Positions 9,977 through 45,345 are shown, counted from the first letter of the stretch. The stretch is 64,000 nt of DNA from IMGVR_UViG_3300044712_002668:1-64000; one strand, 5' to 3'. Notes: a model not told the origin generated them from the sequence alone. Numbers and translations are program-made.

Positions 9977-10905
9977 TGGCTATTTCAATGGATTTAAGAG
10001 TTCTAGCTCGCAAGCTGGAGAAGAGCAGTGATGACTTATTGGTTAATGCGGCAGCAAAAGATCCTAATATTTTTGATAAAGTTGCCCAGGCTGTAGCCGC
10101 TGCTTCAACCTTACTTGAAGAAGTTGCAAATGATTTGGATGCCTCTCAATCTAATGAAATAAAACCAGAACAACTGGATGAAATAGCAGCATTAGCTTCT
10201 TCATTTTATGAGAGTGGAAATCCATTATTGAAAAAGCAGGCTTCTGTATTGGATGAGATATTGCTGTCTATTGCAGCTCCAAAAAACGCTATAGCTGAAT
10301 CTAAGAGAGTTAGTGAAGATGAGATTAATAAACTCAGAGCAAAGCGCAGGGGAGAGGCTGTTAAGGAGTTATATCAAGATCCAAAAGAAGCTCTTGATAA
10401 GATGAACCTTGTAAAAGAGCAAACTGATGCGGTCAAGAAGCAGGTAAAGCGTTATGCCCCATTGGAGGCTCCATTACAGACACGGTATGCACCTGATATG
10501 CCAGGTGTTATGATGACAAGAATTTCTGATCATATTTACCAAGATTTAGTTACTGGTAAGATTTATGACTTCAAGGCTGGATATACAACAGTTAAGGGAA
10601 ATAAAATTCCAGGTTCTTCTGTTGAAAATCAAACCGCTGCTCTGGGAGATCAGCGTCATGGCAATGCCATGTTTGAAACTCGTGAAAGTATTATGAATAG
10701 AATGGCTTCTGATGAAATTGACTTTATAAAACAGGCTGGTGATAAGATAAATATTGCCAAACAATTTTTGAAAGATGCCTCTGAGTTTTATCCTGAGAAG
10801 AAAGCGTTGGCAATCGAAGTGGTAGATAAATATCTATCAAATGATGATATGACACTTTCTTTGGACCTCTTGGATGGTCCAAAAAAAAAACTCATGAGGT
10901 GGTAG
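9976..10905 (+). CDS. Putative head protein/leader; 0-frame product ending just after an A10 slippery run
   Basis: 309 aa; KKQA-S, NRMA-S and IKQA-G motifs; ends ...GPKKKLMRW*. Confidence 0.75.
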   Translation: MAISMDLRVLARKLEKSSDDLLVNAAAKDPNIFDKVAQAVAAASTLLEEVANDLDASQSNEIKPEQLDEIAALASSFYESGNPLLKKQASVLDEILLSIAAPKNAIAESKRVSEDEINKLRAKRRGEAVKELYQDPKEALDKMNLVKEQTDAVKKQVKRYAPLEAPLQTRYAPDMPGVMMTRISDHIYQDLVTGKIYDFKAGYTTVKGNKIPGSSVENQTAALGDQRHGNAMFETRESIMNRMASDEIDFIKQAGDKINIAKQFLKDASEFYPEKKALAIEVVDKYLSNDDMTLSLDLLDGPKKKLMRW

Positions 10906-10951
10906 GTTTAAGCAGTTATGCTGCTTTCTTCCCTCCAACAGCACAACCTCA
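10879..10951 (+). other. Candidate -1 ribosomal frameshift / slippage site
   Basis: CCA AAA AAA AAA CTC (A10 at 10881-10890); -1 frame is open from the run into the 2096-aa ORF; downstream pairings AAGCAG/CTGCTT and TGAGGT/ACCTCA. Confidence 0.6.
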
Positions 10952-13900
10952 AATTGATGAGATACTTGATAAATACAAGGCTTTATCAATTTCATATGAG
11001 GAATGCAAAAAGCAATTAATAGAGCTTGGACGTTCTCTTAAGTTGCCAGAGGCTTTGCTGGAACATGAAGTGAAGCTTTTGATTCAAAACGATAGTCAAA
11101 ATAATTTCCCACCAGAAGCCACTAAGGCAGTTAATGATATTTTAGAGTGGTATAAGAAAGATCCAATGAATAAAGCGAAAGCTATTAGCGCTTTATATCA
11201 TTTAGCAGCCGAATATAATGTACCTAATGTTAATTATATAGTACATCGTATTATTAAAGAGTTTGAAGCTGAAAACTCTCTTGTACCACAATTGCCAGCT
11301 ATACCAGGAAGAGAGTCATTTGTTGGGGTGGAAAATGAATTTGATAGTACCATAATAGATTTATGGCAAGGTATTGAAACACCAGAAACAGCCTTTATAA
11401 TATTAGACCGTTTATTAATTCATAATCCACAATATACTAAAAATGAAAAAGCAAGAGAAAAGGTTATAAATCCGATAATTGAGTATGTTGAAGGAATGCG
11501 TGGGCACACAGCATTTACACCAGAAACAGAAAGTACTTTTTCTGAGCAAATTCCAACAGAGATAAATAGTGATTTATTGAGCCCTGAAGTTCAGGCTACC
11601 AAGAAATTCCGTGCCCACCAGATTGGTCTTGAAAGATATGACTCAGAAACACTGAAACACATTGAAAATGTGTTTGATTTATTGAGAAGCTCTACTATCT
11701 CAAAGGAAGAAGCTTTTAATAAATTGTTCTTGGTTATTAAGAAATTCTTATCTACAAAGAAGAATTATACGGAGATTCCTGGCGAATTGGATGCTTGGTC
11801 AGAACAGCATACAAGAGCTCTACTTAATGCTGAGTATAATAGGATTCAGCAACAAAAAAAGAAAGAGATGGCTGATAATAGGCTTAAAGAGTGTTCTCCA
11901 AGACATATTCTTGGAGCGCCAATTAATTTTTCAGACCCAGCAGTAGCTAATAAAGTAAGGAGATTATATCATCTGTTTACTAATGGTAAATTACCATGGA
12001 AAACATATCGTGCTGAGTTATTAAAAATTGGTATTGATGGTGATACACTTCCTGAAGAGAATGATATTCAAAATGCTGTAGAAGAGTTGATAACTCGTGT
12101 ATATAGTTTCAGTATAACATGGAGTGATTTTACCAGGAACATGATATTGCTTGGCAAAAATCGTAAAGATATACTTGAAATTGCAGAGAATCTGTTCAAG
12201 GACAATCAAATTACCGAGCATCAATTAACAGAGAGAACTTTGTTTGTTCTTTTGGCTTTGAAAGGATATGAACAAGGAGCCTGGAAAGCTTTTGAAAATT
12301 TCATGAAGGCAAAGGATCTTCCAGATGGAGATGAAAATAAACAGACAATACAACGGTTTGAGAGTAAGCTTGAAACAATGGGTCTCAACAAAAACGAGAT
12401 TGAAATGTTTATCAAGCTATCAGGTGTAACAACTTTTTATGAGTTGGTTCCAAAACTTACAGGTAATAATATCCTTGTAAGAATAGAAATTGATAGAAAA
12501 CTAACCGGTGAACCTGAATGGTCAAGGGTAATTATAAACGGTGCAAGAGAGTCTTTACCCCTAAAGAGCAAGACACTTAAAACTGGTATTTACAACATTG
12601 TTTTTGATGTTTGTGGTTATAAACAATTATCTCAAATTTTCAATCTTGATTTGCCAGAGTCTATGCCAGCGGAGTCTCCAAAGAAAGAACACTGCGTTGA
12701 TATTTGGGTTGCCAATCCATTATTTCCTGAGAAATGGTTGTTTTTCAAATCTGTACCACTTGAGGTGGATGCTAGCCAAGCAAAAATTGTACGTAGATTT
12801 GTAAAGCAAATTGAAAGTGTAACTGACACGGTTGAAGCTAGAACCAATCTATTAGTCAAATACAGTGCAATTGAGTTTTTGAAAACTCTGGATATTGCAG
12901 AGGAAGCAAAAGCTCTTGGATCTGATTATGGAAAGCTAACGCCAGAGGTATTATCTGGTATTTTAGGTTGCTTCAAACAAGCCAGGGATACAACTCATCC
13001 AGGTGATAAGCCTGGTGTTCAATGGGATTTGACCAATGAAGATCATGTAAATGACCTCATTGCTAAAGCCAATAATTTATGGAATGATCGCTTTTTGAGC
13101 GCAAATGTAGGCGAAAATCTTAATAAGATGATTTCCTTGGATACTTTCAAGGTTATATTCTCCTTGTTCAATAAAATAACGTCAACTGTAGATCCTCCAG
13201 AGGGAGATACATGGAATGTTGAAGACAAGGAACAAGCTGGTACTTTAGCGTCCAAGATAAAAGAAAGCATAGATCAAACTTATACAACTCGTAAGATTTA
13301 TAGCCTTGATAAGACTGTTATTACAAGTATTATTACAAGAATATATAATGATATAATGCATAACACAATGCCATTGGATATGGCATTGCCAGAATCTACT
13401 GAGAGTGTTGAACAGGATCTTTCAAAATTCTGGGATTTATCAAACCCTGATCATGTTGCATATCTTACAGAGAAAGCCAAGCAAAAATGGGATGATTTGA
13501 TAACACAGATAATATCAGCTCCAGCAATAAAGGATCCTGAGAATCCAGATATCAAAACAAGAAATGATTTATATCTTGAATTTATGTTATATGGTTTTCC
13601 TAAGTTGAAAGAACAGATGGAAAATGAGAAGAAAGAAGAACAAGTTGTGGTAGAACCCGCAACACCTTCTGCACCAGCAAAGGCTAGAAGATTAACAAAA
13701 GAGGAAAAAGCAGCTAAAGAAGCATCTCAAAAGAGAAATATTGATATTATCAAACAAATGACTGAAAGAAGCTTTGTTGCCAGAAGTATGTTTGGTAATT
13801 TCTCAAGAGAGCAACGTGAAAAAGAATGGAACAAAATTTGGCAAGAGATGTGTGCCGAAAGTCGTGATTGGATTCTTTTATCAGCGGTTGAGGAAAAGGG

Positions 13901-17954: not shown

Positions 17955-19924
17955 TAAACAATTTCTTTAAAAAGAAATTAGATAGCGATAGGTTTTTGCT
18001 TTTACCAGATGATGTGAAGGAAAAACTTATATCTGATTTTAATTTAATGTCTTCTTTGGGTATAGAGAATGAAGACGATCAAAGGAAGTTTTATTACATA
18101 TCATTACATACACCTAGAATAATCAAGGATTTATTTAAAAATCAAATTCCACATCATATGTATGGAAAAATTATTGAAGAGGTTTATAGTAACCGTGAAA
18201 ATAAGCCTGTTAATTCTTTATTGGCTTTAATGGAAGCTATTGATGGAGCCATAAAGAAAATGTTACCGGAACGTATGAAACTTGCTTATCCACAAGGGGA
18301 ACCAATTTTAAACCAAAGACCAACCTATAATCTTGAGAAATGGGTAGGGGCAACTAGAGATATTTACGCATTAATATCGAAGGGCAACAAAGAAAAGGAA
18401 GCCTTTGAAGAAGTAACCAAAAATTGGCAGGAAAGGGAAAAAATGAATTACGAAAAATGGTTGAATTTCTATAGAGAAAGGGTTCCAGAGAAATATACTA
18501 AGATGGCTAATTTATTTGTCACACCTAACGGTATATCTTTTGACGGTATTAATTATGATAGTTTGAAGTCAAAAATTCCAAATCCTATTTCTGTAACGAA
18601 TACTCCTGGTCATCCAAAAGACGTTCATGACACAGATGATAAATCTGATCAAAATGATGTAAGAGAACGTATTGATAGACAACGTACAAAGATTATTGGA
18701 CGTTTGCGCTCTGCTGAAAAATTGCTTGAAAGCAATGATGGTCAGTTATTTGCTGGTGACGATTTAGAGTTGATGTTGCGTTTACTACAAGATTTAAAAC
18801 GTAAAGTACAAACAGCTACTAAAAGGACAGTAAAATCATCATTATTTGACGATTATATAATTCGTACTGCGAATTATTTATCTTCTCTTGGTAAAGAACA
18901 AGCGGCTGACTTTTTTATAAAAGTAGCAGGCCCTCCAGGAATGCCTGAGATTCCTTCTCCATTAACTGGTCCATTGCCAGGTCCTAATGACCCTGTTGGC
19001 GGTAGTAGTGGAGGTGACGGAACAGGAGATAAGAATGATACTGAAGAGTTGTTAAAAGAGTTTTTTGACAATCTTTCCAGAGGTGTTCAGGACCCTGATA
19101 ATGAAGCCAGAGAGCGTAATCGTATTTTTGAAGACAAGAAACGTCCTCCTCATGGTCATGGCAGATATTCTGCTGGAAAACTTGATGTAAGGCCACCACA
19201 TGGTCAGGGTAGATATTCAAAAAAGAAAGCAGATGAAGAGTTTGAATTGGTTGTTGAAGCTCAAGAGGCTATACCAGCACAAGAGGTAGCGCCAGCTAAA
19301 GCACCTATTCCTGCCCCGGAAGCCATTCCAGAACCTGTTTCTGAGGCTCCTGCTGTGGAGGGTGCCATTGAGGATATAGAGCCCTCTGCGCCTAAGGTAG
19401 TAGAAGATAAAACCGATGACGTTATTGATGCTGCATTGAAAAATATCAGTATTGGAGATGTTGTAAAGCGTTTGGAGATGTTGGTTTCCATTTATAATCA
19501 ACGTGAGATTTCACGTCAATTATCAATTCTTGATATTATGATGGATAGGGTTGGTTTAGCATCATTTTTCCCAAGTCTTGGAGAGGCAATGGCTAAGGCA
19601 TTGGAGGCCAATCAATACATCGGTAGTCGTTTGGAAGATGTGTTGACAAAAGTAAAGGGTTCAATGCAAATACCTGGAGCTGATCAATGGACAGAGATTA
19701 AGCAAGATACAGCACCGGAAACAATGGCTATCAGACAAAATCTTGAAAACCAAGAGGCTGAGGAACAAAAGAGAAAAGACCTAAGAAAACAAAAGGAGCT
19801 TAGCAGGCTTGAAGGAAAGGAACCGGCAGCAGCACCTGCTGCACCCCCACCACCATCTATCGAACCACAAGAGTTGGAAAGACCAGCACGCGTTGAAACC
19901 ACACCACCAATTCAAACTAGATAA
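17951..19924 (+). CDS. Putative multi-segment head protein
   Basis: 657 aa; MKLA-Y, TKMA-N, IKVA-G and KKA-D motifs, Pro-rich linkers, RPPHG(H/Q)GRYS duplicate. Confidence 0.75.
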   Translation: MINNFFKKKLDSDRFLLLPDDVKEKLISDFNLMSSLGIENEDDQRKFYYISLHTPRIIKDLFKNQIPHHMYGKIIEEVYSNRENKPVNSLLALMEAIDGAIKKMLPERMKLAYPQGEPILNQRPTYNLEKWVGATRDIYALISKGNKEKEAFEEVTKNWQEREKMNYEKWLNFYRERVPEKYTKMANLFVTPNGISFDGINYDSLKSKIPNPISVTNTPGHPKDVHDTDDKSDQNDVRERIDRQRTKIIGRLRSAEKLLESNDGQLFAGDDLELMLRLLQDLKRKVQTATKRTVKSSLFDDYIIRTANYLSSLGKEQAADFFIKVAGPPGMPEIPSPLTGPLPGPNDPVGGSSGGDGTGDKNDTEELLKEFFDNLSRGVQDPDNEARERNRIFEDKKRPPHGHGRYSAGKLDVRPPHGQGRYSKKKADEEFELVVEAQEAIPAQEVAPAKAPIPAPEAIPEPVSEAPAVEGAIEDIEPSAPKVVEDKTDDVIDAALKNISIGDVVKRLEMLVSIYNQREISRQLSILDIMMDRVGLASFFPSLGEAMAKALEANQYIGSRLEDVLTKVKGSMQIPGADQWTEIKQDTAPETMAIRQNLENQEAEEQKRKDLRKQKELSRLEGKEPAAAPAAPPPPSIEPQELERPARVETTPPIQTR

Positions 19925-21469: not shown

Positions 21470-22339
21470 ATGACCAAGACAGCACAACACATACATGAAT
21501 TTCAACTTCCAGAGTTTCTGGAAGTTCATCTTGATGAACCCATGGTTTTTGATACTGAGGAAAATGGAGAGCCAGAGTTTTCTCTTAGTATACATGACGT
21601 TCCTGGGGCTCCCGATGCCACAGAAATTGAAGAGCCAGTAGAAGATCCTGAAGACAGTGATGTTGAAATTGAGGAAGAAGGAGAGCCTGGCGAAGGCAAT
21701 ATCTGGGATTGGGGTGCAGCCGGTGGCCATAAAGGATTCTTGGCTTGGCTCAAAAAAATGATTGAAAACATTCCGCGTCATAGTGGTCATGATACTACTG
21801 GATTGGAAAAGGCTATTGCTTATTTTGAAAGTATTGACCGTGAGATCAGTAAAGCAATGCGTACCGATTTCAAGGATGAAATCAACTCTGCACACGCTGA
21901 AAAAGCCCGTGAAGAAATTGAGAATGGTTTGGAGCGCTTGGTAGAACGTCTTGAGAAGGTCAGGACAACAAAATATAAGAGACACCAGAAGAAAACCAAG
22001 AAAAAGGCTTGGTATGATGTTGGTACTGAAGATGGGTTTATAAAAGAGGCTCAGAAGGCTACCAAGATAACTGGTATTACAATTACAGTACCTTTAATTA
22101 TTTCTCTTGCTGCTAGAGTTGTTATCAATGGAGTTGTTTCTGCTGGTCATGATTTAGAAGAGCTTTTTGATGGTCAAGTAAAAGAGTGGAATTTTGATAA
22201 GCGTGAAAAAGCCGAGTTGGCACAGTTATTAGCTGATATGGGTTATGCAATGCGTAGAGATCGTGGATTTGAAGTTGGCAAGGAAGTTGACCAGACACGT
22301 TCTGATAACAGAGACTGGGCTGCTTCTTATTATGGATAA
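21470..22339 (+). CDS. Putative head protein with acidic N-terminal region
   Basis: 289 aa; starts MTKTA-Q; internal KKKA-W and IKEA-Q; biased codon use. Confidence 0.75.
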   Translation: MTKTAQHIHEFQLPEFLEVHLDEPMVFDTEENGEPEFSLSIHDVPGAPDATEIEEPVEDPEDSDVEIEEEGEPGEGNIWDWGAAGGHKGFLAWLKKMIENIPRHSGHDTTGLEKAIAYFESIDREISKAMRTDFKDEINSAHAEKAREEIENGLERLVERLEKVRTTKYKRHQKKTKKKAWYDVGTEDGFIKEAQKATKITGITITVPLIISLAARVVINGVVSAGHDLEELFDGQVKEWNFDKREKAELAQLLADMGYAMRRDRGFEVGKEVDQTRSDNRDWAASYYG

Positions 22340-24957: not shown

Positions 24958-24971
24958 TATATAGGTATTTG

Positions 24972-30498: not shown

Positions 30499-30499
30499 T

Positions 30500-32264: not shown

Positions 32265-32423
32265 ATGTTAATAAAAACAGGTGATGCACAGATAATTGGT
32301 GTTGTGAAAGAAGCCAATAATGATGCGTTGGAAGACAAAGAAAGGGAAAAGATTTTAAAGCAAGCCCTGGAACAGGCTAAAAATTCACCAAGACCAATTA
32401 AAAAAACGAGTTCGGAGATCTAA
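32265..32423 (+). CDS. 52-aa ORF missed by the ORF track; N-terminus duplicates that of the protease gene
   Basis: GGAG RBS; MLIKTGDAQII...; TAATG-coupled to 32423. Confidence 0.65.
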   Translation: MLIKTGDAQIIGVVKEANNDALEDKEREKILKQALEQAKNSPRPIKKTSSEI

Positions 32424-35400
32424 TGTTAATAAAACTGGGAGAATCACAAATTCGTTCTGGAGATATACAATCTATTGAAAAAATATCAAATGATATAGAT
32501 TTGGATATTGAAAACAGAATGACTAAGTTTGCAAAACAATTAAAAGTTATAGCACCTCAGGCCAAAGATTTCTTATATTTTACCTGTGTTATGATGCACG
32601 CTGCCGAGGCTTCATTATTAAATGATGACGGTTCCTTGAAGAAGCATGCAGATGGAAGTCCGGTAAGAGCACAATGGGAAAAGGTTGGGGATCATGGAAT
32701 AAAATGGATATGTTCTGATAGGAATGTAAAACCATATAAAAATAATAATAATGATATTTTCCCTGAGAAGGAACTAAAGGTAGCTTACAAGAAATGGGTT
32801 GGACGTCCATTATGCCTCGATCATCAATCACAATCAGTTGATAAGATTCGAGGCGTTATTGTAGATACAGTTTGGGATGAGAAAAGAAAAAGAGTTATTG
32901 CACTATGTGCTTTGGATAAAAAGAATTATCCAGATCTTGCGCATAAAGTTGCATCAGGAGTAGCAACCAATGTTTCAATGGGTACTGCCGTAGGTCGTGC
33001 AGTATGTACTGAAGATGGTTGTCATCGTGTAGCGAAGACAGAACGTGATTTTTGTCAGCACATGAGAAATAAAAGCTGTTATGGTGAGATTAATCTTGAT
33101 TTATCTCCTATAGAGCTTTCATTAGTTGTTAGCGGTGCAGATCCAAAAGCCAAGGTAAAACATATTATTGCCAAGGATTTGGGGAAAGCAGCCGAAACAC
33201 TCACTGATTACCTTGGAATGAAAGAAGGTGATGGTGATATTACGAAAGACGATTTAAAGGAAGTTCAGAAAGATCTTGAACAATTGACCAAAAAAATCAG
33301 TAAGTTGACTGGCGAATTGGACGAGATAACGGAAGAAACCGATATACACGATGCGAGCGCTTATCCAGCTACTCGCTCAACATATGAGGTATCTGATGTT
33401 GAGACATCGGGAGTTAATTTAAGAGCGCCGGAGCAAATTCCATTATATGCTTCGGACTTACAAAAGGCAATAATGGGAGCGCAAGAAAAGATTGCGCAGC
33501 TTCAGGAGAATTATAACAGACTTTCTTCTTTGTTAAAGAGCGAGGAATCAATGACTAGAAAAAATGCATATTTTCAAGGAACAGTTGAGCCAAAACCAGG
33601 CGAGACAATGTATACACCAGATCCCTTGGCAGACAAGGCAAGGCTCATGGATAAGCATCTTCATGGTCCTGGCGATTTCCCAGACGTAGGTAATGTCGAG
33701 GGAATGTATCCAGGTATTACTCAGGATGACGAGGAGCTTAAAAAGAAGCTCCAACGTTTGGCAGAGGAGGAAGAGCGCGCGTTATTCCGTGAGGCTGCGC
33801 TAAAGAAAGCCAAGGAAAACCTGCTAAAGCGTCAAGCTGAATTAAAGAGCGAAGCTTATTGGCAGGGCACCACTGAGCCAAAACCTGGCCAGACCACATA
33901 TAAGCCAGATCCATTGAACAATGAAGCTCGTGAAGATGACAAACATCTTCAGGGTCAGAAACCATTCCCAGATGTGGGTAATGTTGATGGATTGTATGGC
34001 GATGACATGAAGACCAAAGAGAAACTTTCTCGTGCTTCATTGAATGCTAAATTCCGTAAGGCAGCCGGTTCTGATGGTCGTTTGGATAAGGCCGCATCTC
34101 GTTGGGAGGTCTATGCCAATGATACCCTTATTTTGACAGCTTCCGTTGATCAAATTACCAAGGGTAATGCTGACGTATTGTTTGAATCCGTTGCTACAAA
34201 GAGATTTGGAAAGAGTCTTTTGGACAGGATTCAATCAGAAGGTTTCGAGGCTACTCGTGCAGCTCTTCTAAAGACTGCCGGCGCCCCTCCAGCACCTCCA
34301 GCAATGCCTGAAATGCCTCCAGCAGCTCCTCCAGCAGGCGCTCCTCCAGCCCCTCCAGTTGGTGCTGAAGAGCCTCCACAGGCTCCAGAAAAGGGTGGGG
34401 ATCGTGTAAAGGAGATTATAAACGATCTTCGTGATCTTCTTGATGAGATTGATAATAAGATCAGCGATCTTGAAGAGCATTGTCTTGGACCAGTTGAAGA
34501 GGACGCCACTCATGTAGAGAATGTGGAACCAGCTCCAGAGCATGATTTCGCAGGTGAGGCTCCAAAGACAGCGTCTCAGTTACAGAGAATGCGTAAGACT
34601 GTAAATGGTATGTTGCGTGATGGAATCCATGAGATGATGTCAGATCTCAGTGCTCATGCAAAGGAAATCAAGACAGCAAGTGAGTTATATAAGCGCAGCT
34701 ATGATACAATGACTCCAGAGCAGCGCAAGTATTTGAATGCATTGGCAGCAGACGCCGTTACTGATGCAAAGTCTGCATTAAGAGAGTCTGTTCGTTTGAT
34801 GGGCGCAGTAGTAAAGTATGCTCATGGAACAGCAGAATTGGAGAAACGCGCTATGAAATCAGAAAAAGAAGAAGAGGATTGTAATGCAGCTGAGGATCCA
34901 ATGGGCGATCCAATGGGTGAGCTAACTGAGCTGACTCCAGAGACTTTGGGTGAGATTGGTGGTGAGGAAGAGATTCCTGGCCCAGAAGAGACAGAAGAAG
35001 CTGGTGTACCAACAGATGTAACAGAGAGTATTGAACAGGCTTTGGAGGAAGAGGCTGGTGATTTGCCAGAAGAGGAAGAGGAAGAGCTTGAGGAAGAGGA
35101 TGTTGGTAATGCTCCAGGTGATATTGTAAATCAGAATGGAAAAACAACAGTTGAATTGAATCCTCAAAATATGAAATTCCCAGGACCTGTACAAGCTTCT
35201 CTTAACACCAAGGAATCACGCGCACAAGCTCGTATGAAATTGGCAGAGAAGGCAGTTGAACTCGGTTTCAACGATCTTTCTGGCAAGGCCCATCCAAAGG
35301 GCAGCGTAGACGCTCCAAATGTTGAGACAAAGCCAAGTGTTGATGCCAAGTTCCATGTTCCACAAGATCTCAAGTCTTTGATGTTGGATCTTGCAAACCT

Positions 35401-35938
35401 TCCTCCAAAGGTTCGCAAGCAGGCTGAAGAGATTCACAATCTTGTAACCGCAGGACAGCTCGATCCAACAGACGTTGATGGATTGGTTGCTCATGGGGTA
35501 GATCCAGCGGCTGTAAAGTACTGGAAGGAAATGTGGGGTGCTGCTGGAGACTCTGAGTCAAAGGAATTTGCTACCAAGATGGTTGCAGAGCATCAGGCAT
35601 TCAAGGCAGCCGAGGACATGACATCTCATAAGGCTCGTATCAAGCAGGCTTATGAGTTAGCTTATGACATGGAAAGAAAGGGTATGATTGATCATGGACA
35701 GATTGATGATCAGGTCAATGAGATCATGAACTGGAATGAGGCTGGTTTCAACAGCGTCAAGAACATGATTGGACGTAAGCCTGTCGTAAAGCAAGCTTCT
35801 ATTCCAAATGTTGGCTTGTTACACTCCGGAGATGTAATACTTCCATCTGCACAGTTTGCAGGTGTTGAGTCCGTATCTTCTAATGGATCCGAAATCAAGA
35901 ACTACTTCGAGAGTTATTTTGCAAACAAGAGACTGTAA
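32423..35938 (+). CDS. Prohead (maturation) protease fused to scaffold-like region
   Basis: N-terminal domain with LCLDH, NVSMG and IELSLVVSGADPKA typical of phage prohead serine proteases; then coiled-coil, repeat, Pro-rich and acidic segments; lies between portal and capsid genes. Confidence 0.75.
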   Translation: MLIKLGESQIRSGDIQSIEKISNDIDLDIENRMTKFAKQLKVIAPQAKDFLYFTCVMMHAAEASLLNDDGSLKKHADGSPVRAQWEKVGDHGIKWICSDRNVKPYKNNNNDIFPEKELKVAYKKWVGRPLCLDHQSQSVDKIRGVIVDTVWDEKRKRVIALCALDKKNYPDLAHKVASGVATNVSMGTAVGRAVCTEDGCHRVAKTERDFCQHMRNKSCYGEINLDLSPIELSLVVSGADPKAKVKHIIAKDLGKAAETLTDYLGMKEGDGDITKDDLKEVQKDLEQLTKKISKLTGELDEITEETDIHDASAYPATRSTYEVSDVETSGVNLRAPEQIPLYASDLQKAIMGAQEKIAQLQENYNRLSSLLKSEESMTRKNAYFQGTVEPKPGETMYTPDPLADKARLMDKHLHGPGDFPDVGNVEGMYPGITQDDEELKKKLQRLAEEEERALFREAALKKAKENLLKRQAELKSEAYWQGTTEPKPGQTTYKPDPLNNEAREDDKHLQGQKPFPDVGNVDGLYGDDMKTKEKLSRASLNAKFRKAAGSDGRLDKAASRWEVYANDTLILTASVDQITKGNADVLFESVATKRFGKSLLDRIQSEGFEATRAALLKTAGAPPAPPAMPEMPPAAPPAGAPPAPPVGAEEPPQAPEKGGDRVKEIINDLRDLLDEIDNKISDLEEHCLGPVEEDATHVENVEPAPEHDFAGEAPKTASQLQRMRKTVNGMLRDGIHEMMSDLSAHAKEIKTASELYKRSYDTMTPEQRKYLNALAADAVTDAKSALRESVRLMGAVVKYAHGTAELEKRAMKSEKEEEDCNAAEDPMGDPMGELTELTPETLGEIGGEEEIPGPEETEEAGVPTDVTESIEQALEEEAGDLPEEEEEELEEEDVGNAPGDIVNQNGKTTVELNPQNMKFPGPVQASLNTKESRAQARMKLAEKAVELGFNDLSGKAHPKGSVDAPNVETKPSVDAKFHVPQDLKSLMLDLANLPPKVRKQAEEIHNLVTAGQLDPTDVDGLVAHGVDPAAVKYWKEMWGAAGDSESKEFATKMVAEHQAFKAAEDMTSHKARIKQAYELAYDMERKGMIDHGQIDDQVNEIMNWNEAGFNSVKNMIGRKPVVKQASIPNVGLLHSGDVILPSAQFAGVESVSSNGSEIKNYFESYFANKRL
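33557..34003 (+). repeat. Two copies of a ~53-aa unit in the scaffold region
   Basis: RKNAYFQGTVEPKPGETMYTPDPL...DKHLHG..FPDVGNVEGMY vs KSEAYWQGTTEPKPGQTTYKPDPL...DKHLQG..FPDVGNVDGLY. Confidence 0.9.
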
Positions 35939-36001: not shown

Positions 36002-36685
36002 ATGACAAAATTTGATATCGCAAGTAGTATGGATTCTATTATAAGTAGCGAAAGTCATCAAAAAATCTTTACCAGGACCCCTATCACAAAGAAGGCTTCT
36101 TTTGAGAGAGAGGCATCTATTGAAGTTGATCCATCCACATCAGCTATCAAAGATTGCTTTGAGACTCTTAATACCATTTCTGAGATTCTTGATGATGCTG
36201 GGCACTTTGAAGCTTCTGCTTTTGCCATTCAAGCTATGGCTGCTTTAACAAAGCAGGCAAAAGAAAAGTGCGATGAAGAGTGTGAAGAAGAAAAAGAAGA
36301 AAAGAAAGAAAAAGAAGAGGAGGAGGAAGAAGAGGAAGAAGAGGAGGAGGAAGAAGAAGACGATGATGAAAATGATGCATTTGATTTAGCTTCAGTTTTC
36401 GCTTCCCTTGAATCTTTTGCTGCCAAGGATGAGGATCCAAAAGCCAAGGTGAGGAACCGTCCAGAGCCAATTTTTCCTGCCAATAGTCCAAAGGTAAAAG
36501 ACAAGAAGGATCATTTCCCAATCAATACCAAGGGGCGTGCTCGCAATGCTTTGGCCAGAGCCGGAGCATTCAAAGAGCCACCAGCATGGTATAAGGGTTC
36601 TTTATCATCTTTTCAAAAAGCAGTTAGAAGTGCCGTAAAGAAAGCATTTCCAGACATCAAAATTGAAAAGGAAAAGAAGGATTGA
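36002..36685 (+). CDS. Putative head protein with poly-Glu tract and DUF6582-like C-terminal domain
   Basis: GAGG RBS supports ATG at 36002; E/D run; HFPINTKGRARNALARA resembles DUF6582-type phage head motifs (from memory). Confidence 0.7.
   Translation: MTKFDIASSMDSIISSESHQKIFTRTPITKKASFEREASIEVDPSTSAIKDCFETLNTISEILDDAGHFEASAFAIQAMAALTKQAKEKCDEECEEEKEEKKEKEEEEEEEEEEEEEEEDDDENDAFDLASVFASLESFAAKDEDPKAKVRNRPEPIFPANSPKVKDKKDHFPINTKGRARNALARAGAFKEPPAWYKGSLSSFQKAVRSAVKKAFPDIKIEKEKKD
36275..36376 (+). repeat. GAA/GAG low-complexity tract (poly-Glu)
   Basis: Encodes EECEEEKEEKKEKEEEEEEEEEEEEEEEDDDEND. Confidence 0.9.
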
Positions 36686-36686
36686 T

Positions 36687-36872
36687 ATGGAAAAAATCGC
36701 GCTTGATGTATTAATGAATTCATATTTGAATGGAAAGATAGAAAAGGTTGCTCATGAAAAAACAGCAATTGATTCTTTAGCCAAAGCTCAAAGTCTATTG
36801 GTGAAAGCCAATGATGACGAGCATGCGGATATGATAAGTGAAATATTGAATAGTTATGCTGAGGATATATGA
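36687..36872 (+). CDS. Small putative head protein
   Basis: Starts MEKIA-L; AGGA RBS. Confidence 0.65.
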   Translation: MEKIALDVLMNSYLNGKIEKVAHEKTAIDSLAKAQSLLVKANDDEHADMISEILNSYAEDI

Positions 36873-37174
36873 CATTATTTAAACAGGCATCTACTGAAAA
36901 AGAGTTATATGATGGTATGAGTGAAAATATTGATCATGTATATGATAGTATACCAAATCAAAATGTTGATTTAGTGGATCAAGCGATTACTGAACTGGAA
37001 ATTGCGGCGAAAGCATTTCAAACTTCTGGTTTGATTGTTCAAGCCGCAAAGACAGAAAAAGTAGTAAAATCTTTAAAAAAGAAAAAGAATAAAAAACCAA
37101 CTAAAGAAGAGGTCAAAGGATTCAAACCATTTGGCTTCAAGAAAAAAGATTTAGTGAAGGGAGATGATAAATGA
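36869..37174 (+). CDS. Small putative head protein
   Basis: Starts MTLFKQA-S; Lys-rich tail. Confidence 0.65.
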   Translation: MTLFKQASTEKELYDGMSENIDHVYDSIPNQNVDLVDQAITELEIAAKAFQTSGLIVQAAKTEKVVKSLKKKKNKKPTKEEVKGFKPFGFKKKDLVKGDDK

Positions 37175-37449
37175 AAAATATAAAAAAGATTGCTATGCAG
37201 GCGGCAAAAGCTGCAGCAATTAATACTTATAAAAGTATTATGAAAGCAGCTGATTTAACAAATAAATTTACACCACAACAAATTGATGCGTTTCCATTTA
37301 TTTTGGCTAATACAGCTACACAATTAGGTTGGAAAAAGATAGGGCAAGGATCTGGAACTGATAAGAAAACATATGATATTTATGAAAACAACAAGTCAGA
37401 TCAAAGATATCAAGAGCCTTTCTATAAAGCAATACCAAACGCTCTATAA
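37171..37449 (+). CDS. Small putative head protein
   Basis: Starts MKNIKKIA-M. Confidence 0.6.
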   Translation: MKNIKKIAMQAAKAAAINTYKSIMKAADLTNKFTPQQIDAFPFILANTATQLGWKKIGQGSGTDKKTYDIYENNKSDQRYQEPFYKAIPNAL

Positions 37450-38230: not shown

Positions 38231-38239
38231 GAGATATAA

Positions 38240-39054: not shown

Positions 39055-40794
39055 ATGAAAATAGCTAAGCAATCATTTAGTAATCTGTATACTTCTGAGG
39101 TGTATCGTGAGCTTGAGCGTAAAGCTGTCAAGAAGGGTTTTTTCGAACCTACAGCCAAGCAGGTAGTGGAGCATGCCATTCAGAAGAAAGCCTCTCCTAA
39201 AGAGGATTTAGAGGCTACAGGGGATGTTACTCAGGACATTGGCAAGTTGGTTGAAGCCTGTCGTAGGAAGGGTTATATAAAATTTGCTGATGATATTGAG
39301 AGCAAATTTGTTTTATATAAGCAGGCTGAATCTCAACTATACAATCTGAATGTGGACAAGATCAAGGACATTGAGGATTTTGCACATAAGGATGGAGATG
39401 TTGATATTGTAGATGCTGGTGACTTGGGAATGGTAGAAACCATTGAGAGTGCTGCACAGAAGATCTTGAGTGTAGTAAAGACTGAGCCAACTGGAAAGTT
39501 GGCGGCTTTTTCTGCGCATATTTTGAAGACTGCAGAACAACCAGCTATAACTATAAAACCTCCAGAGGGGCTTACAAATATATTGGCAAATGTTGGAAAC
39601 AAAACTGCAGATAGTATCTGGGTTGAAACAAAGAATAACATTGCAAAATATAAAAACTCTTTACAACCTATAAATATTACGTTTCCAGACTTTAAACTTT
39701 GGAATAATGATATTATAAAAATGTATAGTAAATATTCTAATATAAAAACAGAACGTATAATAATGTTTTTATCGTTATATACATCTTTGGGGGCTCAATT
39801 AAATGATATAAAGCCAATTGTTGCTGCCATATATAACAACCCAGAAAATATTAGAGGTATTTGTAAGCAATTAAGTATGACAGATTCTGATAATTATTTT
39901 ACAGGGGTTTCTAGAATAGAACTTCCAACTGATACAGGGGAACGTGAAGATCGTGGAAACACCAGTGTAGATAGACCAAACACTTACCTTGGTTGGTGGG
40001 CAAACAGAATAAAAGGTAATGTAGGAGAATTTTTTGCAGGCTCTCCAACAACAAAAGGTCAGGAAAATCCAAAATCAATTTATACAAAAGGATTAGATCA
40101 GCAAATAAGAGTTGGAGCTGTTGAAAACATTCAAGAATTGGCTGGTAAGATATTAATAGAGTGGAAAAAATTATATGATGATGTTGTAGGGCCAAATCAA
40201 TCTAAAATATCAGAAGCAAATACTGCGGTTTCAAACAAAATAAATGAGTTTACTGGACAAATAAAAACACTTAATTTGAGTGAAGATATAAAAAATGCAA
40301 ATGGATCAATTAATCCAAAACTTTGCTATGATTCTTTGAAGTCTTTTTCAGATAAATTAAACGGCATTATAAAAACAGCTGTAGAATTACAAAATGAGCT
40401 TAAAACATTATCTTCAGAAAATTATAAAGGACTTTCTGATACTGTTAATGGACTAACAGGAGAATTAAAATCAGATAAAATTGCCGTTCTTATGCAGGAT
40501 CCTAATGGTAAGAAAAATGTAGAAGAGAAAATATATGTTGCTCCCATGATGGTTAAACTTGGTAAAGTAAAAGTTTATCTTGAATCAATGGTAGATAATG
40601 CTTCCGATGAAATTAAACCAAAAATAAAAGAAAACATAGAAAAAGTAGACATTTTAATAGATTTGATTAATCAAGCAAAAGGTAAACCATTTGCAGAGTT
40701 GAAGGTAAATTTAGCCCAATATGATGTTGATTTTAATTCAATAGATCAGTTGTTAGGATGGGTAAACGCTACAGCGTCTAAAATGGGCTTATAA
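39055..40794 (+). CDS. Putative internal/ejection protein (conserved leader plus AT-rich cargo)
   Basis: 579 aa; TSEVYRELER, helical module, LKTA-E, then composition shift. Confidence 0.7.
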   Translation: MKIAKQSFSNLYTSEVYRELERKAVKKGFFEPTAKQVVEHAIQKKASPKEDLEATGDVTQDIGKLVEACRRKGYIKFADDIESKFVLYKQAESQLYNLNVDKIKDIEDFAHKDGDVDIVDAGDLGMVETIESAAQKILSVVKTEPTGKLAAFSAHILKTAEQPAITIKPPEGLTNILANVGNKTADSIWVETKNNIAKYKNSLQPINITFPDFKLWNNDIIKMYSKYSNIKTERIIMFLSLYTSLGAQLNDIKPIVAAIYNNPENIRGICKQLSMTDSDNYFTGVSRIELPTDTGEREDRGNTSVDRPNTYLGWWANRIKGNVGEFFAGSPTTKGQENPKSIYTKGLDQQIRVGAVENIQELAGKILIEWKKLYDDVVGPNQSKISEANTAVSNKINEFTGQIKTLNLSEDIKNANGSINPKLCYDSLKSFSDKLNGIIKTAVELQNELKTLSSENYKGLSDTVNGLTGELKSDKIAVLMQDPNGKKNVEEKIYVAPMMVKLGKVKVYLESMVDNASDEIKPKIKENIEKVDILIDLINQAKGKPFAELKVNLAQYDVDFNSIDQLLGWVNATASKMGL

Positions 40795-40807
40795 TAGTAG
40801 GTGTATC

Positions 40808-42793: not shown

Positions 42794-42804
42794 TCAGGAA
42801 ATAA

Positions 42805-44091
42805 ATGAACGGAGATATTCAATACATATCAGATACACTGCTTCTGGAGAAGACATTTAAAATACTGTCTTCTCTGGAAGCTGATCCGTTTAATAAAAAA
42901 GCCGGTATTATAGATAATTTAAAATCCTCAATTGGTTCTGGTATTGATGAAGCTATCAAACAACATGTTAGTTTTGATTCGCCAGAATCTACCATTCATA
43001 CTGTGATTGGCATTCTTCAAGGACCAGTTTTATGGGCAATTGGTGGTTGGCAGATTTCTTTATTGGCCACTGCCGCTCAAGTTCTTTGGGGTATTGATAT
43101 TTATACCATTATCAAGAAGCTTGTCCAAATAATATCAGGCATGTTGCAGGTAAAGAAACAATTGTCATTTGATGATGTTACAAACGCAATTAGAAGTGTA
43201 ATGCCAGCTGGATTGATGGAAGAAAAAAAGACAGCCGGTGATTTTTTGTTTGGTTTGAGAGAACTTGAAGAACAAGGTAAAATCTTAAAAGCTGCTTCTT
43301 ATAAAATACCAAAAGAGCAAGATAGATTGATTGTTCTAGCTGCTGGAGCCTCTACTCAACCAGCCGCTGGAAATATAAAAAACCTATTATCATTCATGGG
43401 AAAGGCCAGAGGCATGTTCCTGATTATGGGTATTTTCAGATGGATAATTGTAACACTATTAATGGGAACTGGCTTATTGGCCGGTGGTCATATTTTGAAG
43501 AAGTTTGTTGGTAAAGAACTGGCTGAAACTGGAATTCAAGATAAATGGAATAAGCTTATTCAAGGAGATGTCAGTGGGCTTTGGGGAGCAAAACCAGAGG
43601 CCAAGCCTGATGCAAAGCCAGAAACCAAAACTGATACTAAAGCTGCTCCATCTATTTGGTCAAAAATATTCGGGGATGGAACTTCTACGGTTCCATCTGC
43701 ACCTGATATAAAAACAAAACAACCATCTTTATTATCAAGGCTGTATTCTAATATCGTAGGAAAGCCAGAAAAAAGTTCAGACATGGTATATGAACCATTG
43801 AGAGATAATTATGGTAAATTAAGAACTATTGCTGAGTTGATTTGGGATTGGATTATGGATGAGTTTGAGGATCAATATCCAAAGCTTGAATCTTTCAAAG
43901 AAAAAATAACAAGCTCACAATATTTTAAGAAAGTAGAGCTTACGCTTAAAGCAGCATACAATAAGGGAAAATCTGATAATAGAAGTCCTGAAGGACTTAT
44001 TATGCCAGATGAATTACCAAATCGTGAAGCGGTTTTTAACTATATGAAGCCAATATTGGATCCAATATTCGCACAGGCAAAAAGAGGTTGA
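42805..44091 (+). CDS. Putative membrane-active ejection protein
   Basis: 428 aa; long hydrophobic segments (VIGILQGPVLWAIGGWQISLLATAAQVLWG; GMFLIMGIFRWIIVTLLMGTGLLAGG). Confidence 0.55.
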   Translation: MNGDIQYISDTLLLEKTFKILSSLEADPFNKKAGIIDNLKSSIGSGIDEAIKQHVSFDSPESTIHTVIGILQGPVLWAIGGWQISLLATAAQVLWGIDIYTIIKKLVQIISGMLQVKKQLSFDDVTNAIRSVMPAGLMEEKKTAGDFLFGLRELEEQGKILKAASYKIPKEQDRLIVLAAGASTQPAAGNIKNLLSFMGKARGMFLIMGIFRWIIVTLLMGTGLLAGGHILKKFVGKELAETGIQDKWNKLIQGDVSGLWGAKPEAKPDAKPETKTDTKAAPSIWSKIFGDGTSTVPSAPDIKTKQPSLLSRLYSNIVGKPEKSSDMVYEPLRDNYGKLRTIAELIWDWIMDEFEDQYPKLESFKEKITSSQYFKKVELTLKAAYNKGKSDNRSPEGLIMPDELPNREAVFNYMKPILDPIFAQAKRG

Positions 44092-44094
44092 AAA

Positions 44095-45345
44095 ATGTTT
44101 GAGGATAGTGAAATTTTTGACGAATATGCAAAAATAGCATTCGCACAGGGCCTGGTTGCCGAAGCGGAAGAGGATAAAGAGGCACCAAAACCAAAAACGC
44201 GCAACAAAGATACTGATGAATCAATTCAGTTGCTGTATGGAATCAATCCAGAGAGTATTTTTAAAGAGGATTGTATTTTGGATGCAGCTCATCCTGAATC
44301 AAAATCAGTTGGCAGATCTTATGATGCCATGAACTCAATTGTTGAGAATCTTCATGAAAGACAAGATATTATGGCTTATATAGCTCAGAAAGTACCGAGA
44401 GGTGTGCTGACTATGGAGCGTTATGTCAAGGCCAAGGAAGAACTTGTCAATTCTATCATCAGAGCAGCGTTTCTATTTGATAATAGAAATGAAACAGCGT
44501 TGATGTCATTGGCTGATAAGTGTGCTGAACAAGTAGCATCTCAAAGAGTAAAGAACGCTGCTGCTGGTATTCTGCCTGCATTGGTTCCCGCTGCAGGTAC
44601 TGCACTGGTTGGAACCGGAGTTGCTGCAGGAGCAGTGCTTGCTGGCTATTTGGCATGGGGGCCAACTTTAGCTGTGGGCGTTAAAAACAACGGACAGCAA
44701 GTGATTGATGCTTTGATCAATTTGCAGGGAGAAGAATATTTCTCCACTTTATTACAATCTGTTTACGATACAGTTTTGGATTTGATGGAAATAACTGGTA
44801 AAGTATCAGCTTATAAAATCAAAATCGATCAAGATCAGATGACAAATCCTGATAATACACAATTGAGTCCTAGTTTTTTTGCGGAGGCAAATAATGCCCT
44901 TACCATATATACAAGGGCATTAGGAATTGTAAAAGAAAATATTCCAAAGTGGGTATCAACTTTACAAAGAGCACATACAACAGCAAAAATGCTTGAATCT
45001 CAAGATAACACTGATATTTCAAATAAATTCTATTATGTTCTTGGAATGGTAAAATGGGATCAAGTTGATATAGTGATAGATAAACTTACAGGGCGCAAGA
45101 TATTCAGTGGTTTATCAGAATCATTCATGAAGAAAAGAGAACCAACTATCGGTGGTTTATATGGAGCTATAAAGCTTGAAGAGGAGTCCGCAAAGAAATA
45201 TATTGAGGTTACCTCTCAAATATCAAGGCAAGCACCAATAACACCTGGAATTTCACAACCAATAACACCTGGAATTTCCCAAAAACCTGAAGCTGGAAAA
45301 TCAACTCCTAAATCTGGAATCAAGAAACCAGAATTTTATTTCTAA
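44095..45345 (+). CDS. Putative membrane-active ejection protein
   Basis: 416 aa; EDSEIFDEYAK leader, VKNA-A followed by a ~40-aa Gly/Ala hydrophobic stretch. Confidence 0.55.
   Translation: MFEDSEIFDEYAKIAFAQGLVAEAEEDKEAPKPKTRNKDTDESIQLLYGINPESIFKEDCILDAAHPESKSVGRSYDAMNSIVENLHERQDIMAYIAQKVPRGVLTMERYVKAKEELVNSIIRAAFLFDNRNETALMSLADKCAEQVASQRVKNAAAGILPALVPAAGTALVGTGVAAGAVLAGYLAWGPTLAVGVKNNGQQVIDALINLQGEEYFSTLLQSVYDTVLDLMEITGKVSAYKIKIDQDQMTNPDNTQLSPSFFAEANNALTIYTRALGIVKENIPKWVSTLQRAHTTAKMLESQDNTDISNKFYYVLGMVKWDQVDIVIDKLTGRKIFSGLSESFMKKREPTIGGLYGAIKLEEESAKKYIEVTSQISRQAPITPGISQPITPGISQKPEAGKSTPKSGIKKPEFYF
45234..45278 (+). repeat. 21-bp direct repeat with 24-bp period (PITPGISQ x2)
   Basis: ACCAATAACACCTGGAATTTC at 45234 and 45258. 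Confidence 0.9.

What the first reader, a model, noticed from the sequence alone, without database searches (positions are those of the whole stretch)
10174..44559. Recurrent ~28-aa helical-hairpin module next to K-x-A: a candidate capsid-loading tag
Seen: a loose pattern L..A..L...G....A..+..+ recurs in otherwise unrelated proteins, usually ending in K-x-A. Examples: IIRTANYLSSLGKEQAADFFIKVA (18857-18928), LLCEASEMCEKIGMHKQSEIILKQA (28561), LNTISEILDDAGHFEASAFAIQAMAALTKQA (from ~36167), IGKLVEACRRKGYIKFADDIESKFVLYKQA (39238), IIRAAFLFDNRNETALMSLADKC..VKNA (44455), LDEIAALASSFYESGNPLLKKQA (10174); weaker copies in 36687 and 36869. Established: T4 internal proteins use a cleavable capsid-targeting sequence. 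Inference: a folded, modular tag that recruits cargo into the prohead and is then cut off.
Basis: partly seen in the sequence, partly recalled or inferred. Interest (0 to 1): 0.75.

Follow-up and report, generated by a model that had tools for sequence, protein, structure and literature searches.

The report
Megaphage head-protein cleavage motif and leader
In the head genes of an uncultivated 455-kb phage, the tripeptide Lys-x-Ala is a real, conserved signal that most likely marks where the head protease cuts.

Summary

**K-x-A is real.** In the head-module proteins it occurs 120 times against 87±8.5 expected. K-x-A-S occurs 21 times against 5.5, and KQA 13 against 3.6. The rest of the genome sits at expectation. 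The excess recurs in phage G and in three other related head modules. K-x-A is kept in orthologs about twice as often as other K/A spacings.

**The neighbouring enzyme fits.** The protease next door has the T4 gp21 / herpesvirus assemblin fold and is fused to a roughly 900-residue scaffold-like tail that carries many K-x-A sites.

Profiles built from the segments, with or without orthologs, recover no left-out member and no further copy above shuffled or reversed controls.

**What is modular is a different element.** A 27-residue N-terminal leader ending in K-x-A heads at least eight otherwise unrelated small proteins of this genome. It is always N-terminal in the 15 matches found among 1.84 billion proteins.

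**Best reading:** K-x-A is the prohead-protease site, and the leader is a T4-CTS-like loading tag. Cleavage and loading are inferred, not shown.

The parts
10174..10242 (+).
   Evidence: Translation. No ortholog was found in the sequence fetched from the relative G002.
18857..18928 (+).
   Evidence: The segment and K-x-A (KLA) are kept in the G002 ortholog.
28561..28635 (+).
   Evidence: The ortholog has EEA in place of KQA, while the last residues (..RI) are kept. It is not a removable N-terminal tag.
36167..36259 (+). A second conserved site, KKA followed by S, lies at 36089-36097.
39238..39327 (+). K89-x-A91 lies at 39319-39327.
   Evidence: K89 and A91 are invariant in 15 homologs while the middle residue varies among Q, V, R and K. 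AlphaFold2 gives helix 56-71, a turn at G73 and helix 75-96 with pLDDT about 70, within a model that is otherwise poor.
44455..44559 (+).
   Evidence: KNA is kept in one of two orthologs.
32423..33208 (+). Prohead protease domain (residues 1-262 of the 1171-aa protein); H134 and S185 are invariant
   Evidence: PHROG 18299, head maturation protease, E 5e-16. AlphaFold2 model with pLDDT 78. Best structural matches are T4 gp21 and herpesvirus proteases, Z 9.8-7. Invariant residues in 25 homologs.
33209..35938 (+). Scaffold-like extension of about 900 residues fused to the protease. The whole 1171-aa protein has 21 K-x-A, 14 of them kept as [KR]-x-[AG] in orthologs.
35789..35935 (+). The last K-x-A site (VVKQA followed by S, 35789-35797) and the conserved 46-residue C-terminal tail after it
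   Evidence: Kept in all three phages as KQA-S, KTA-S and KQA-S. The layout matches the herpesvirus M-site followed by a capsid-binding tail (PMC4498786). Binding to the capsid protein is inferred.
37171..37251 (+). The 27-residue N-terminal leader of the 92-aa protein 37171-37449, ending KAA followed by D. This is the window's only copy of the modular leader.
24954..25295 (+). N-terminal extension of the portal protein, up to K112-Q-A114 (25287-25295)
   Evidence: The site is kept as K-x-A or K-x-G in three phages. Phage G's portal also has K-x-A sites ahead of its conserved core.
21470..21484 (+). Short N-terminal peptide MTKTA. The same kind occurs at 20921-20947, 26962-26982, 28647-28676, 31623-31637, 36869-36889, 39055-39066 and 40808-40825.
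   Evidence: 9 of 32 head-region proteins have K-x-A in their first 10-12 residues, against 15-21 of 414 elsewhere (Fisher p about 1e-5). Several are kept in orthologs while the flanking residues differ.
42805..42903 (+). A 33-residue N-terminal peptide ending KKA followed by G, in the 428-aa protein 42805-44091
   Evidence: K-x-A is kept in both orthologs.
46878..47888 (+). Major capsid protein. It has an N-terminal extension of about 50 residues that phage G's capsid protein lacks, with K-D-A at 46923-46931.
   Evidence: PHROG 2522, E 8.5e-78. 54% identity to phage G gp27. N-terminal alignment.

Best explanation
The window is the head-assembly region of an uncultivated megaphage related to Bacillus phage G. 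It lies on a contig of 454,833 bp.

Its prohead protease has the T4 gp21 / herpesvirus assemblin fold and is fused to a long scaffold-like tail. The protease most likely cuts after Lys-x-Ala. The preferred context is a hydrophobic residue two places before the Lys and Ser, Glu, Asp, Gly or Tyr after the Ala. I infer three kinds of substrate piece:
1. Very short N-terminal peptides of the form M-x(1-6)-K-x-A.
2. Long N-terminal regions of the portal and of several internal head proteins.
3. A 27-residue leader (..LKKIA..AAKKAAIETYRSIMK.A) shared by at least eight otherwise unrelated small proteins scattered over the genome.

By analogy with the T4 capsid targeting sequence, the leader would hold its cargo on the scaffold core until the protease removes it. 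The last K-x-A of the scaffold, followed by S, would free a conserved 46-residue C-terminal tail, as the herpesvirus M-site does.

Shown here: the motif statistics, the motif's conservation, the modularity of the leader, and the protease fold. Inferred: that cutting occurs at K-x-A, and that the leader or the tail bind anything.
For: **Motif excess**
- K-x-A, KQA and K-x-A-S are in excess only in head-region proteins.
- The excess recurs independently in phage G gp4-gp23 (56 vs 28.6, P 4e-6, with five control spacings (K..A, KA, A.K, K.S, K.G) near or below expectation, R.A at 1.29 (not significant) and E.A below).
- It recurs in three further head modules that carry the same protease family (57 vs 30.6, 55 vs 42.4, 64 vs 49.4).

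**Conservation**
- K-x-A is kept in orthologs in 29 of 78 cases, against 15-21% for the K+1, K+3, K+4 and K+5 spacings.
- Conserved sites have a hydrophobic residue at P5 in 25 of 36 cases, against 14 of 43 for non-conserved sites.
- K89 and A91 are invariant in 15 homologs of the 39055 protein while the middle residue varies.

**Position in proteins**
- K-x-A is enriched at N-termini and is kept there in orthologs.

**Protease**
- Structural matches to T4 gp21 and VZV protease at Z 9.8; the top 36 rows are all gp21 or herpesvirus assemblins.
- The pseudorabies assemblin's predicted sites end in Gln-Ala (YLQA-T, VQA-S; PMC4498786); that herpesvirus assemblins in general cut after Ala before Ser is my own recollection.

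**Leader**
- Six copies in the held record, 41-53% identical to the first sequence (60% mean column identity), on bodies with no detectable similarity.
- Two more copies elsewhere on the same contig.
- Copies in relatives G001 and G002.
- Only 15 matches in 1.84 billion representative proteins, all at residues 1-32.
- The T4 precedent is described in PMC9026906.
Against: - No proteomic or biochemical evidence of cleavage was available.
- Many K-x-A lie inside predicted helices, for example K89-A91 in helix 75-96 of the 39055 model. Their conservation could therefore be structural.
- A-x-K shows a slight excess too (101 vs 87, p 0.065), so helical composition contributes something.
- The excess is modest, about 1.4-fold, so many K-x-A are surely not sites.
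- The 80-aa leader protein at 305419 matches Pfam HK97-gp10_like just above its cut-off (24.1 vs 21.4 bits). That would make its N-terminal helix part of a fold rather than a tag.
- Phage G has the motif excess but no copy of the leader.
- The one complex prediction gave no answer and is not evidence either way.
Confidence: 0.55

Rival explanations
1. One reading: a folded helical hairpin of about 28 residues is a mobile tag that recruits unrelated cargo proteins into the prohead and is then cut off at K-x-A.
For: - Hand-picked hairpin windows score higher against each other than random windows do.
- In an unbiased full-length profile comparison, the best pairs are among neighbouring hairpin proteins: 36663 vs 36869 at 16% probability, and 35951 vs 36663 at 11%. 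The first of these aligns hairpin to hairpin, as does 35951 vs 36869 (2.7%); 35951 vs 36663 aligns N-terminal regions.
- AlphaFold2 gives a helix-turn-helix at moderate confidence for 39238-39327.
- In a distant relative (L020), two adjacent genes share an 81%-identical 37-residue helix-KG-helix N-terminus on unrelated bodies.
Against: - All HMM tests fail, including leave-one-out.
- No pair exceeds 16% probability.
- The windows were chosen by eye for the pattern.
- The hairpin lies before, after or far from K-x-A depending on the protein.
- The best example is a fixed part of one orthologous family.
Confidence: 0.1
2. The K-x-A excess is a by-product of Lys- and Ala-rich helical or coiled-coil composition in head proteins. 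It is not a protease site.
For: - Head-region proteins are richer in K and A than the rest of the genome.
- A-x-K is slightly high (L020).
- Several sites lie in predicted helices.
Against: - Shuffling within each protein removes composition effects, and the excess remains.
- The KA and K-x-x-A spacings are flat or low in all five phages.
- Spacing-specific conservation.
- Concentration at N-termini.
- A preference for Ser at the next position: 21 vs 5.5.
Confidence: 0.12
3. The shared 27-residue leader is real but serves something other than capsid loading. It could be a docking helix for tail or neck assembly, a membrane or compartment targeting signal, or a regulatory peptide.
For: - One member weakly matches the HK97 gp10-like connector family.
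- Most copies lie far from the head genes.
- No binding partner was identified (one search gave no answer).
Against: - The leader ends in the same K-x-A that marks head-protein termini.
- The copy in the window, and both copies in G001, sit inside the head module between scaffold and capsid genes.
- The T4 internal-protein genes set a precedent for leaders shared by proteins with divergent mature regions (PMC9026906).
Confidence: 0.2
4. Some of the hairpins are permanent binding elements for the capsid protein or scaffold. On this reading they resemble the C-terminal helix-turn-helix of the phage P22 scaffolding protein and are not cleaved tags. The main candidates are the C-terminus of the 26962 protein and the small proteins 36663 and 36869.
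For: - The 26962 hairpin is at the very C-terminus of the gene after the portal, and its last residues are conserved.
- The small hairpin proteins lie between the scaffold and capsid genes.
- The likeness to P22 rests on my recollection of that protein, not on a test.
Against: - No sequence or structure comparison with P22 scaffold was made.
- No complex was predicted for these elements.
- Helix-Gly-helix is a very common arrangement.
Confidence: 0.13

Closest known systems
[quoted passage not shown]
   Same: A short N-terminal propeptide shared by proteins whose mature parts differ. It ends at the prohead protease's recognition motif. The genes are not all in the head cluster. The protease is of the gp21 fold (PMC9026906).
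   Different: The leader here is 27 residues against 10-19 in T4. There is no sequence likeness. The motif is K-x-A rather than Leu/Ile-x-Glu. The lineage is different (phage G-like). Loading and cleavage are not demonstrated here.
Herpesvirus protease-scaffold protein (UL26 / assemblin) with R- and M-sites
   Same: An N-terminal assemblin-fold protease fused to a scaffold. Cutting occurs after Ala, often before Ser. The last site lies a few dozen residues from the C-terminus and frees the capsid-binding tail (PMC4498786).
   Different: Identity in the structural alignments is only 9-16%. Here the third residue before the cut is Lys, where the one herpesvirus M-site read here (pseudorabies, VQA-S) has Val. 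The scaffold part is much longer and carries many candidate sites. Whether the tail binds the capsid protein is untested.
Propeptide processing in giant phages phiKZ, 201phi2-1 and SPN3US
   Same: Many head and ejection proteins, including the portal, lose N-terminal propeptides of 20-250 residues at a three-residue motif. Long propeptides hold several copies of the motif (PMC10052503).
   Different: Their motif ends in Glu (Ala-x-Glu in SPN3US, as I recall it), and no shared leader on unrelated proteins is described in the passages read.
Bacillus phage G (Donellivirus gee) head module
   Same: Closest named relative: capsid protein 54% identical, protease 32%, portal 33%. It shows the same K-x-A excess in head-module proteins and at N-termini.
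   Different: In phage G the protease is a separate 300-aa protein. The capsid protein lacks the 50-residue N-terminal extension. No copy of the KKIA leader is present. Most proteins between portal and capsid genes are not shared.

Membership tests
   Leave-one-out HMMs recover none of the six segments or the five ortholog-enriched families. The best profile-profile probability is 16%.
   The best non-training hit scores 4.2 bits, against 6.1 in shuffled and 7.0 in reversed proteomes. The top hits lie outside the head region.
   True for four segments. One is C-terminal with K not conserved, and two 'weaker copies' lie downstream of the site.
T4-type capsid targeting sequence | A short N-terminal peptide shared by proteins with unrelated mature parts | tested here: met
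   This applies to the KKIA leader. There are six copies in the held record and two more on the same contig. The bodies show no BLAST similarity (E > 0.9). The leader is always at residues 1-32.
T4-type capsid targeting sequence | The peptide ends at the prohead protease's cleavage motif | tested here: inconclusive
   All eight copies in the profile alignment end in K-x-A, as do most database matches, with K-L-G and K-L-N in the most distant. That K-x-A is the cleavage motif is itself inferred from statistics.
T4-type capsid targeting sequence | The peptide is needed and sufficient to load a protein into the prohead, and is removed there | not testable with these tools
   This needs virion proteomics or fusion experiments. 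The complex prediction gave no answer.
T4-type capsid targeting sequence | Sequence relationship to the T4 CTS | not tested
   No comparison was run. The motifs differ: K-x-A here, a glutamyl bond in T4 (PMC9026906). I claim a functional analogy only.
gp21 / assemblin-fold prohead serine protease | The fold | tested here: met
   The model has pLDDT 78. VIA-align gives Z 9.8 to VZV protease and to T4 gp21 (136 of 165 residues aligned). All of the top 36 rows are from this fold family. Foldseek E-values alone are weak, 5e-3 at best.
gp21 / assemblin-fold prohead serine protease | Conserved catalytic His and Ser | tested here: inconclusive
   H134 and S185 are invariant in 25 homologs. I did not check that they superpose on the catalytic residues of gp21.
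gp21 / assemblin-fold prohead serine protease | Self-processing and substrate cleavage at a defined motif | not testable with these tools
   Only indirect evidence exists. Near the protease's own N-terminus, K4 is nearly invariant and followed by x-G in most homologs, and K35-x-A37 is nearly invariant. K-x-A-S sites follow the catalytic domain in phage G gp19.
P22-type scaffold C-terminal helix-turn-helix | A terminal helix-turn-helix that binds the capsid protein | not tested
   This is a resemblance recalled from memory for 28561-28647. No comparison or complex was run for it.

The most novel reading that the evidence does not exclude
A lineage of phage G-like megaphages loads a changeable set of small proteins into the capsid by means of a 27-residue cleavable leader. 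There are at least eight such proteins in this genome, mostly without known relatives. An assemblin-type protease would remove the leader at K-x-A. That would make it a second, independently evolved capsid-targeting system beside T4's. The cargo would probably be ejected into the host.
Probability: 0.4. Interest if true: 0.7.

Novelty: new variant of a known kind. Interest (0 to 1): 0.5.

Why it matters
Capsid loading of proteins through a removable leader is shown experimentally, among the papers I read, only for T4. It has been used there to package foreign enzymes and GFP.

A second system would be of interest for three reasons:
- It has a different leader and a different protease specificity, in a lineage of very large and mostly uncultivated phages.
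- It would point directly to the proteins these phages inject, which are candidate host-takeover or anti-defence factors.
- It would offer a new handle for cargo loading.

The K-x-A rule also gives a way to predict mature protein ends in phage G-like genomes, where most head proteins have no annotation. The parallel with herpesvirus processing is a further link between tailed-phage and herpesvirus capsid maturation. The shared features are cutting after Ala, a protease-scaffold fusion, and a last site that frees a C-terminal tail.

Tried and rejected
I tried a plain HMM, leave-one-out, and ortholog-enriched profiles anchored on the turn. None found anything beyond the training set.
- **Profile-profile comparison of hand-picked windows.** This gave a difference. 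I discount it because the windows were selected for the pattern. The unbiased full-length comparison gave no pair above 16% probability.
- **Complex prediction.** I submitted capsid protein, scaffold C-terminal part and the 37171 leader protein. I resent it with window sequences only. The verdict was 'no answer', so it is not used as evidence.
- **AlphaFold2 of residues 1-175 of the 39055 protein.** Confidence was poor overall, at pLDDT 46.
- **Pattern scan of IMG/VR for the leader.** No confirmed relative was found. The scan for relatives of the 39055 protein also found none.
- **Pfam and PHROGs on hairpin- and leader-bearing proteins.** Nothing informative came back except a borderline HK97-gp10-like match.
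- **Sequence search of the protease against solved structures.** No match.
- **Literature.** The paper most likely to report phage G's processing sites (González et al. 2020, PMC7316594) is not held. Searches for a published phage G cleavage motif found nothing. I therefore cannot say whether K-x-A is already described for phage G.
- **The rest of the 455-kb contig.** A search for more leaders there was not possible, because the record is not held.

Full report
**What the window is**

All long reading frames are on the + strand. The proteins include:
- a lambda gpA-type large terminase (23077-24957);
- a portal (24954-26903);
- a 1171-residue protein whose N-terminal part matches a head maturation protease (32423-35938);
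- a decoration-like protein (46117-46779);
- a major capsid protein (46878-47888).

The closest named relative is Bacillus phage G, with the capsid protein 54% identical, the protease 32% and the portal 33%. Most proteins between portal and capsid genes have no match in any family library.

The held genome record is 335,988 bp at 37.9% G+C. The window's 579-residue protein sits at the same coordinate on a JGI metagenome contig of 454,833 bp. The record is therefore only the first part of a roughly 455-kb genome.

Two syntenic relatives from IMG/VR (G001 and G002, portal 73% and 77% identical) supplied orthologs for most head proteins. Three more distant head modules with the same protease family came from metagenome contigs.

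**Checking the observation**

K-x-A is a real signal:
- Shuffling residues within each protein of the head region gives K-x-A 120 observed against 87.2±8.5. KQA is 13 against 3.6±1.8, and K-x-A-S is 21 against 5.5±2.3.
- A-x-K, KA and K-x-x-A are flat. The 84,000 residues encoded beyond 64 kb are at expectation (first seen).
- The excess recurs in phage G's gp4-gp23 (56 against 28.6, P 4e-6) but not in its gp28-gp60.
- It recurs in the three other head modules (57 vs 30.6, 55 vs 42.4, 64 vs 49.4).
- In ortholog alignments K-x-A is kept in 29 of 78 cases, against 15-21% for Lys and Ala at spacings 1, 3, 4 or 5.
- Sites kept as [KR]-x-[AG] have a hydrophobic residue at P5 in 25 of 36 cases, against 14 of 43 for sites not kept.
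- Nine of 32 head-region proteins have K-x-A within their first 10-12 residues, against 15-21 of 414 elsewhere. In orthologs these N-terminal K-x-A persist while the residues around them change.

**The hairpin pattern does not hold up as a repeated unit**

- An HMM of the six segments finds only its own training sequences. The next hit, at 4.2 bits, is below the best hits in shuffled (6.1) and reversed (7.0) proteomes.
- Leaving one segment out, the other five never recover it.
- With orthologs added and the alignment anchored on the turn glycine, leaving one family out gives at most 0.1 bit, at ranks 17-121.
- Profile-profile scores among eight hand-picked hairpin windows are higher than among random windows of the same alignments (mean 10.2 vs 6.7). 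The windows were chosen for the pattern, so this says little.
- In an unbiased all-against-all comparison of full-length ortholog profiles, no pair exceeds 16% probability. The best few pairs involve neighbouring small proteins (36663 vs 36869, 35951 vs 36663, 39055 vs 36869). That is a hint of local paralogy and nothing more.

Where the hairpin lies relative to K-x-A also varies:
- It lies upstream of K-x-A in four proteins.
- In the 26962 protein it is three residues from the C-terminus, and an ortholog has EEA instead of KQA.
- In 36663 and 36869 it lies downstream of the N-terminal K-x-A.

The best example, 39238-39327, is part of a 170-residue N-terminal domain conserved in 15 homologs, 14 of 531-625 residues and one of 397. 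It is a fixed piece of one family. In that family K89 and A91 are invariant while the residue between them is Q, V, R or K, which is what a K-x-A signal predicts. AlphaFold2 models this stretch as helix-turn-helix with pLDDT about 70, inside a model that is otherwise unreliable.

**What is modular**

While listing KQA sites genome-wide I found proteins that start with nearly the same 27 residues.
- A profile search of all six reading frames gives six such genes in the held record: 37171-37449 in the window, and others near 180, 211, 240.5, 288 and 305 kb.
- The leaders are 41-53% identical to the first sequence, with 12 invariant positions.
- The parts after them, 52-242 residues long, show no similarity to one another (E > 0.9).
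- A further stretch of the same contig holds two more copies.
- G001 has two adjacent copies inside its head module. One has a body homologous to this genome's 211-kb copy. G002 has one gene with a tandem double leader. Phage G has none.
- Against 1.84 billion representative proteins the leader profile finds only 15 proteins. The match is always at residues 1-32, on bodies of 38-268 residues. It ends in K-x-A in all but three: R-L-A in one, and K-L-G and K-L-N in the two most distant.
- A systematic comparison of all N-termini in the genome finds no other shared leader among head proteins.

This is the pattern described for the T4 capsid targeting sequence. There, 10-19-residue propeptides are shared by internal proteins with divergent mature parts, removed by gp21, and sufficient to load foreign proteins (PMC9026906).

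**The protease**

Twenty-five homologs share invariant H134 and S185. The AlphaFold2 model (pLDDT 78) matches T4 gp21 and herpesvirus assemblins. Foldseek gives probability 0.9 and above but weak E-values. VIA-align gives Z 9.8 for both VZV protease and gp21, with all of the top 36 rows from this fold family.

The pseudorabies assemblin's predicted sites are YLQA-T and VQA-S, and it is fused to a scaffold whose last site frees the capsid-binding C-terminal tail (PMC4498786); that cutting after Ala before Ser is general to herpesvirus assemblins is my recollection. The protein here has the same layout:
- a protease domain;
- a roughly 900-residue extension, the whole protein holding 21 K-x-A, 14 of them kept as [KR]-x-[AG] in orthologs;
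- a last site, VVKQA followed by S, that is kept in all three phages, followed by a conserved 46-residue tail.

The portal has K-x-A ahead of its conserved core in this phage, in its relatives and in phage G.

**How it most likely works**

The steps below are inferred unless marked as shown.
1. The protease-scaffold fusion and other internal proteins assemble with the capsid protein into a prohead.
2. Proteins carrying the KKIA leader, or longer N-terminal regions, are held on this core.
3. The activated protease cuts after K-x-A. This removes short N-terminal peptides, leaders and long N-terminal regions, chops the scaffold, and detaches it from the shell at its last site.

Shown: the motif's excess, spacing-specific conservation, N-terminal concentration and recurrence in five phages; the leader's modularity and strict N-terminal position; the protease fold.

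Not shown: any cleavage, any binding, any presence in virions.

**Caveats**

- The excess is about 1.4-fold, so many K-x-A are not sites.
- Some lie in predicted helices.
- A-x-K is slightly raised.
- One leader protein gives a borderline match to the HK97 gp10-like connector family.
- The complex prediction returned no answer.
- I could not read the phage G structural and proteomic paper, so K-x-A may already be known for that phage.

**Verdict**

The 28-residue hairpin module is not supported. The loading-tag role, if it exists, belongs to a different and much clearer element.

The only true modular hairpin I met is in a distant relative. There, two adjacent genes share an 81%-identical 37-residue helix-KG-helix start on unrelated bodies.

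Noticed in passing
Genome beyond the window, about 235.7-316.6 kb (e.g. 247608-250228, 304094-304575, 315078-316645): At least 17 small proteins of 69-115 residues share the start MKV[LI]IL[DN]K[EK][DE]W, followed by variable Gly/Cys/Tyr/Asn-rich sequence. Many stand in tandem. They look like a family of precursor peptides.
   Followed up: partly
JGI contig 3300044712|Ga0453684_0000070; window = its first 64 kb: The held 335,988-bp record is only part of a 454,833-bp contig. The stretch 393,022-413,603 (L017) carries ClpP, ClpX zinc finger, RtcB, HU-like genes and two more leader genes.
   Followed up: partly
L020:787-1083 and L020:1109-1594: In a distant relative, two adjacent genes upstream of the terminase share an 81%-identical 37-residue N-terminal helix-KG-helix segment, and the rest of each protein is unrelated.
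   Followed up: partly
window 30482-31591: A protein inside the head module has an N-terminal dual-specificity/tyrosine phosphatase domain (Pfam Y_phosphatase2/3, PTP-SAK). Two more distant relatives keep a phosphatase-domain gene in the same place. It may be a packaged enzyme.
   Followed up: no
L002:4876-7833, L003:7062-9980; L007:14901-15131 plus 16245-17078: The terminase of G001 and G002 is about 350 residues longer than here, with one insertion between two well-aligned halves, which looks like an intein. The capsid gene of G001 is interrupted by about 1.1 kb. Two protease homologs (P0018, P0083) carry Hint/intein Pfam domains.
   Followed up: no
window 52667-53914 and 53961-58688: The 415- and 1575-residue proteins share their N-termini and a repeated motif (..AVK[AG]ASTAAIA..). 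This accounts for the local K-x-A-S excess downstream of the capsid gene. It is probably a fibre repeat and not a protease site.
   Followed up: no
window 37541-38230 and 38240-38644: Two adjacent paralogous proteins (229 and 134 residues) both end in ..WL. The first is the best-conserved protein of the region after the capsid protein, at 83% and 74% identity to G001 and G002, and has recognisable counterparts in L020-L022. No family match was found.
   Followed up: no
window 10899-17189: A 2096-residue protein of unknown function lies upstream of the terminase. I did not examine it.
   Followed up: no
This is unusual for a head-module protein.
   Followed up: no
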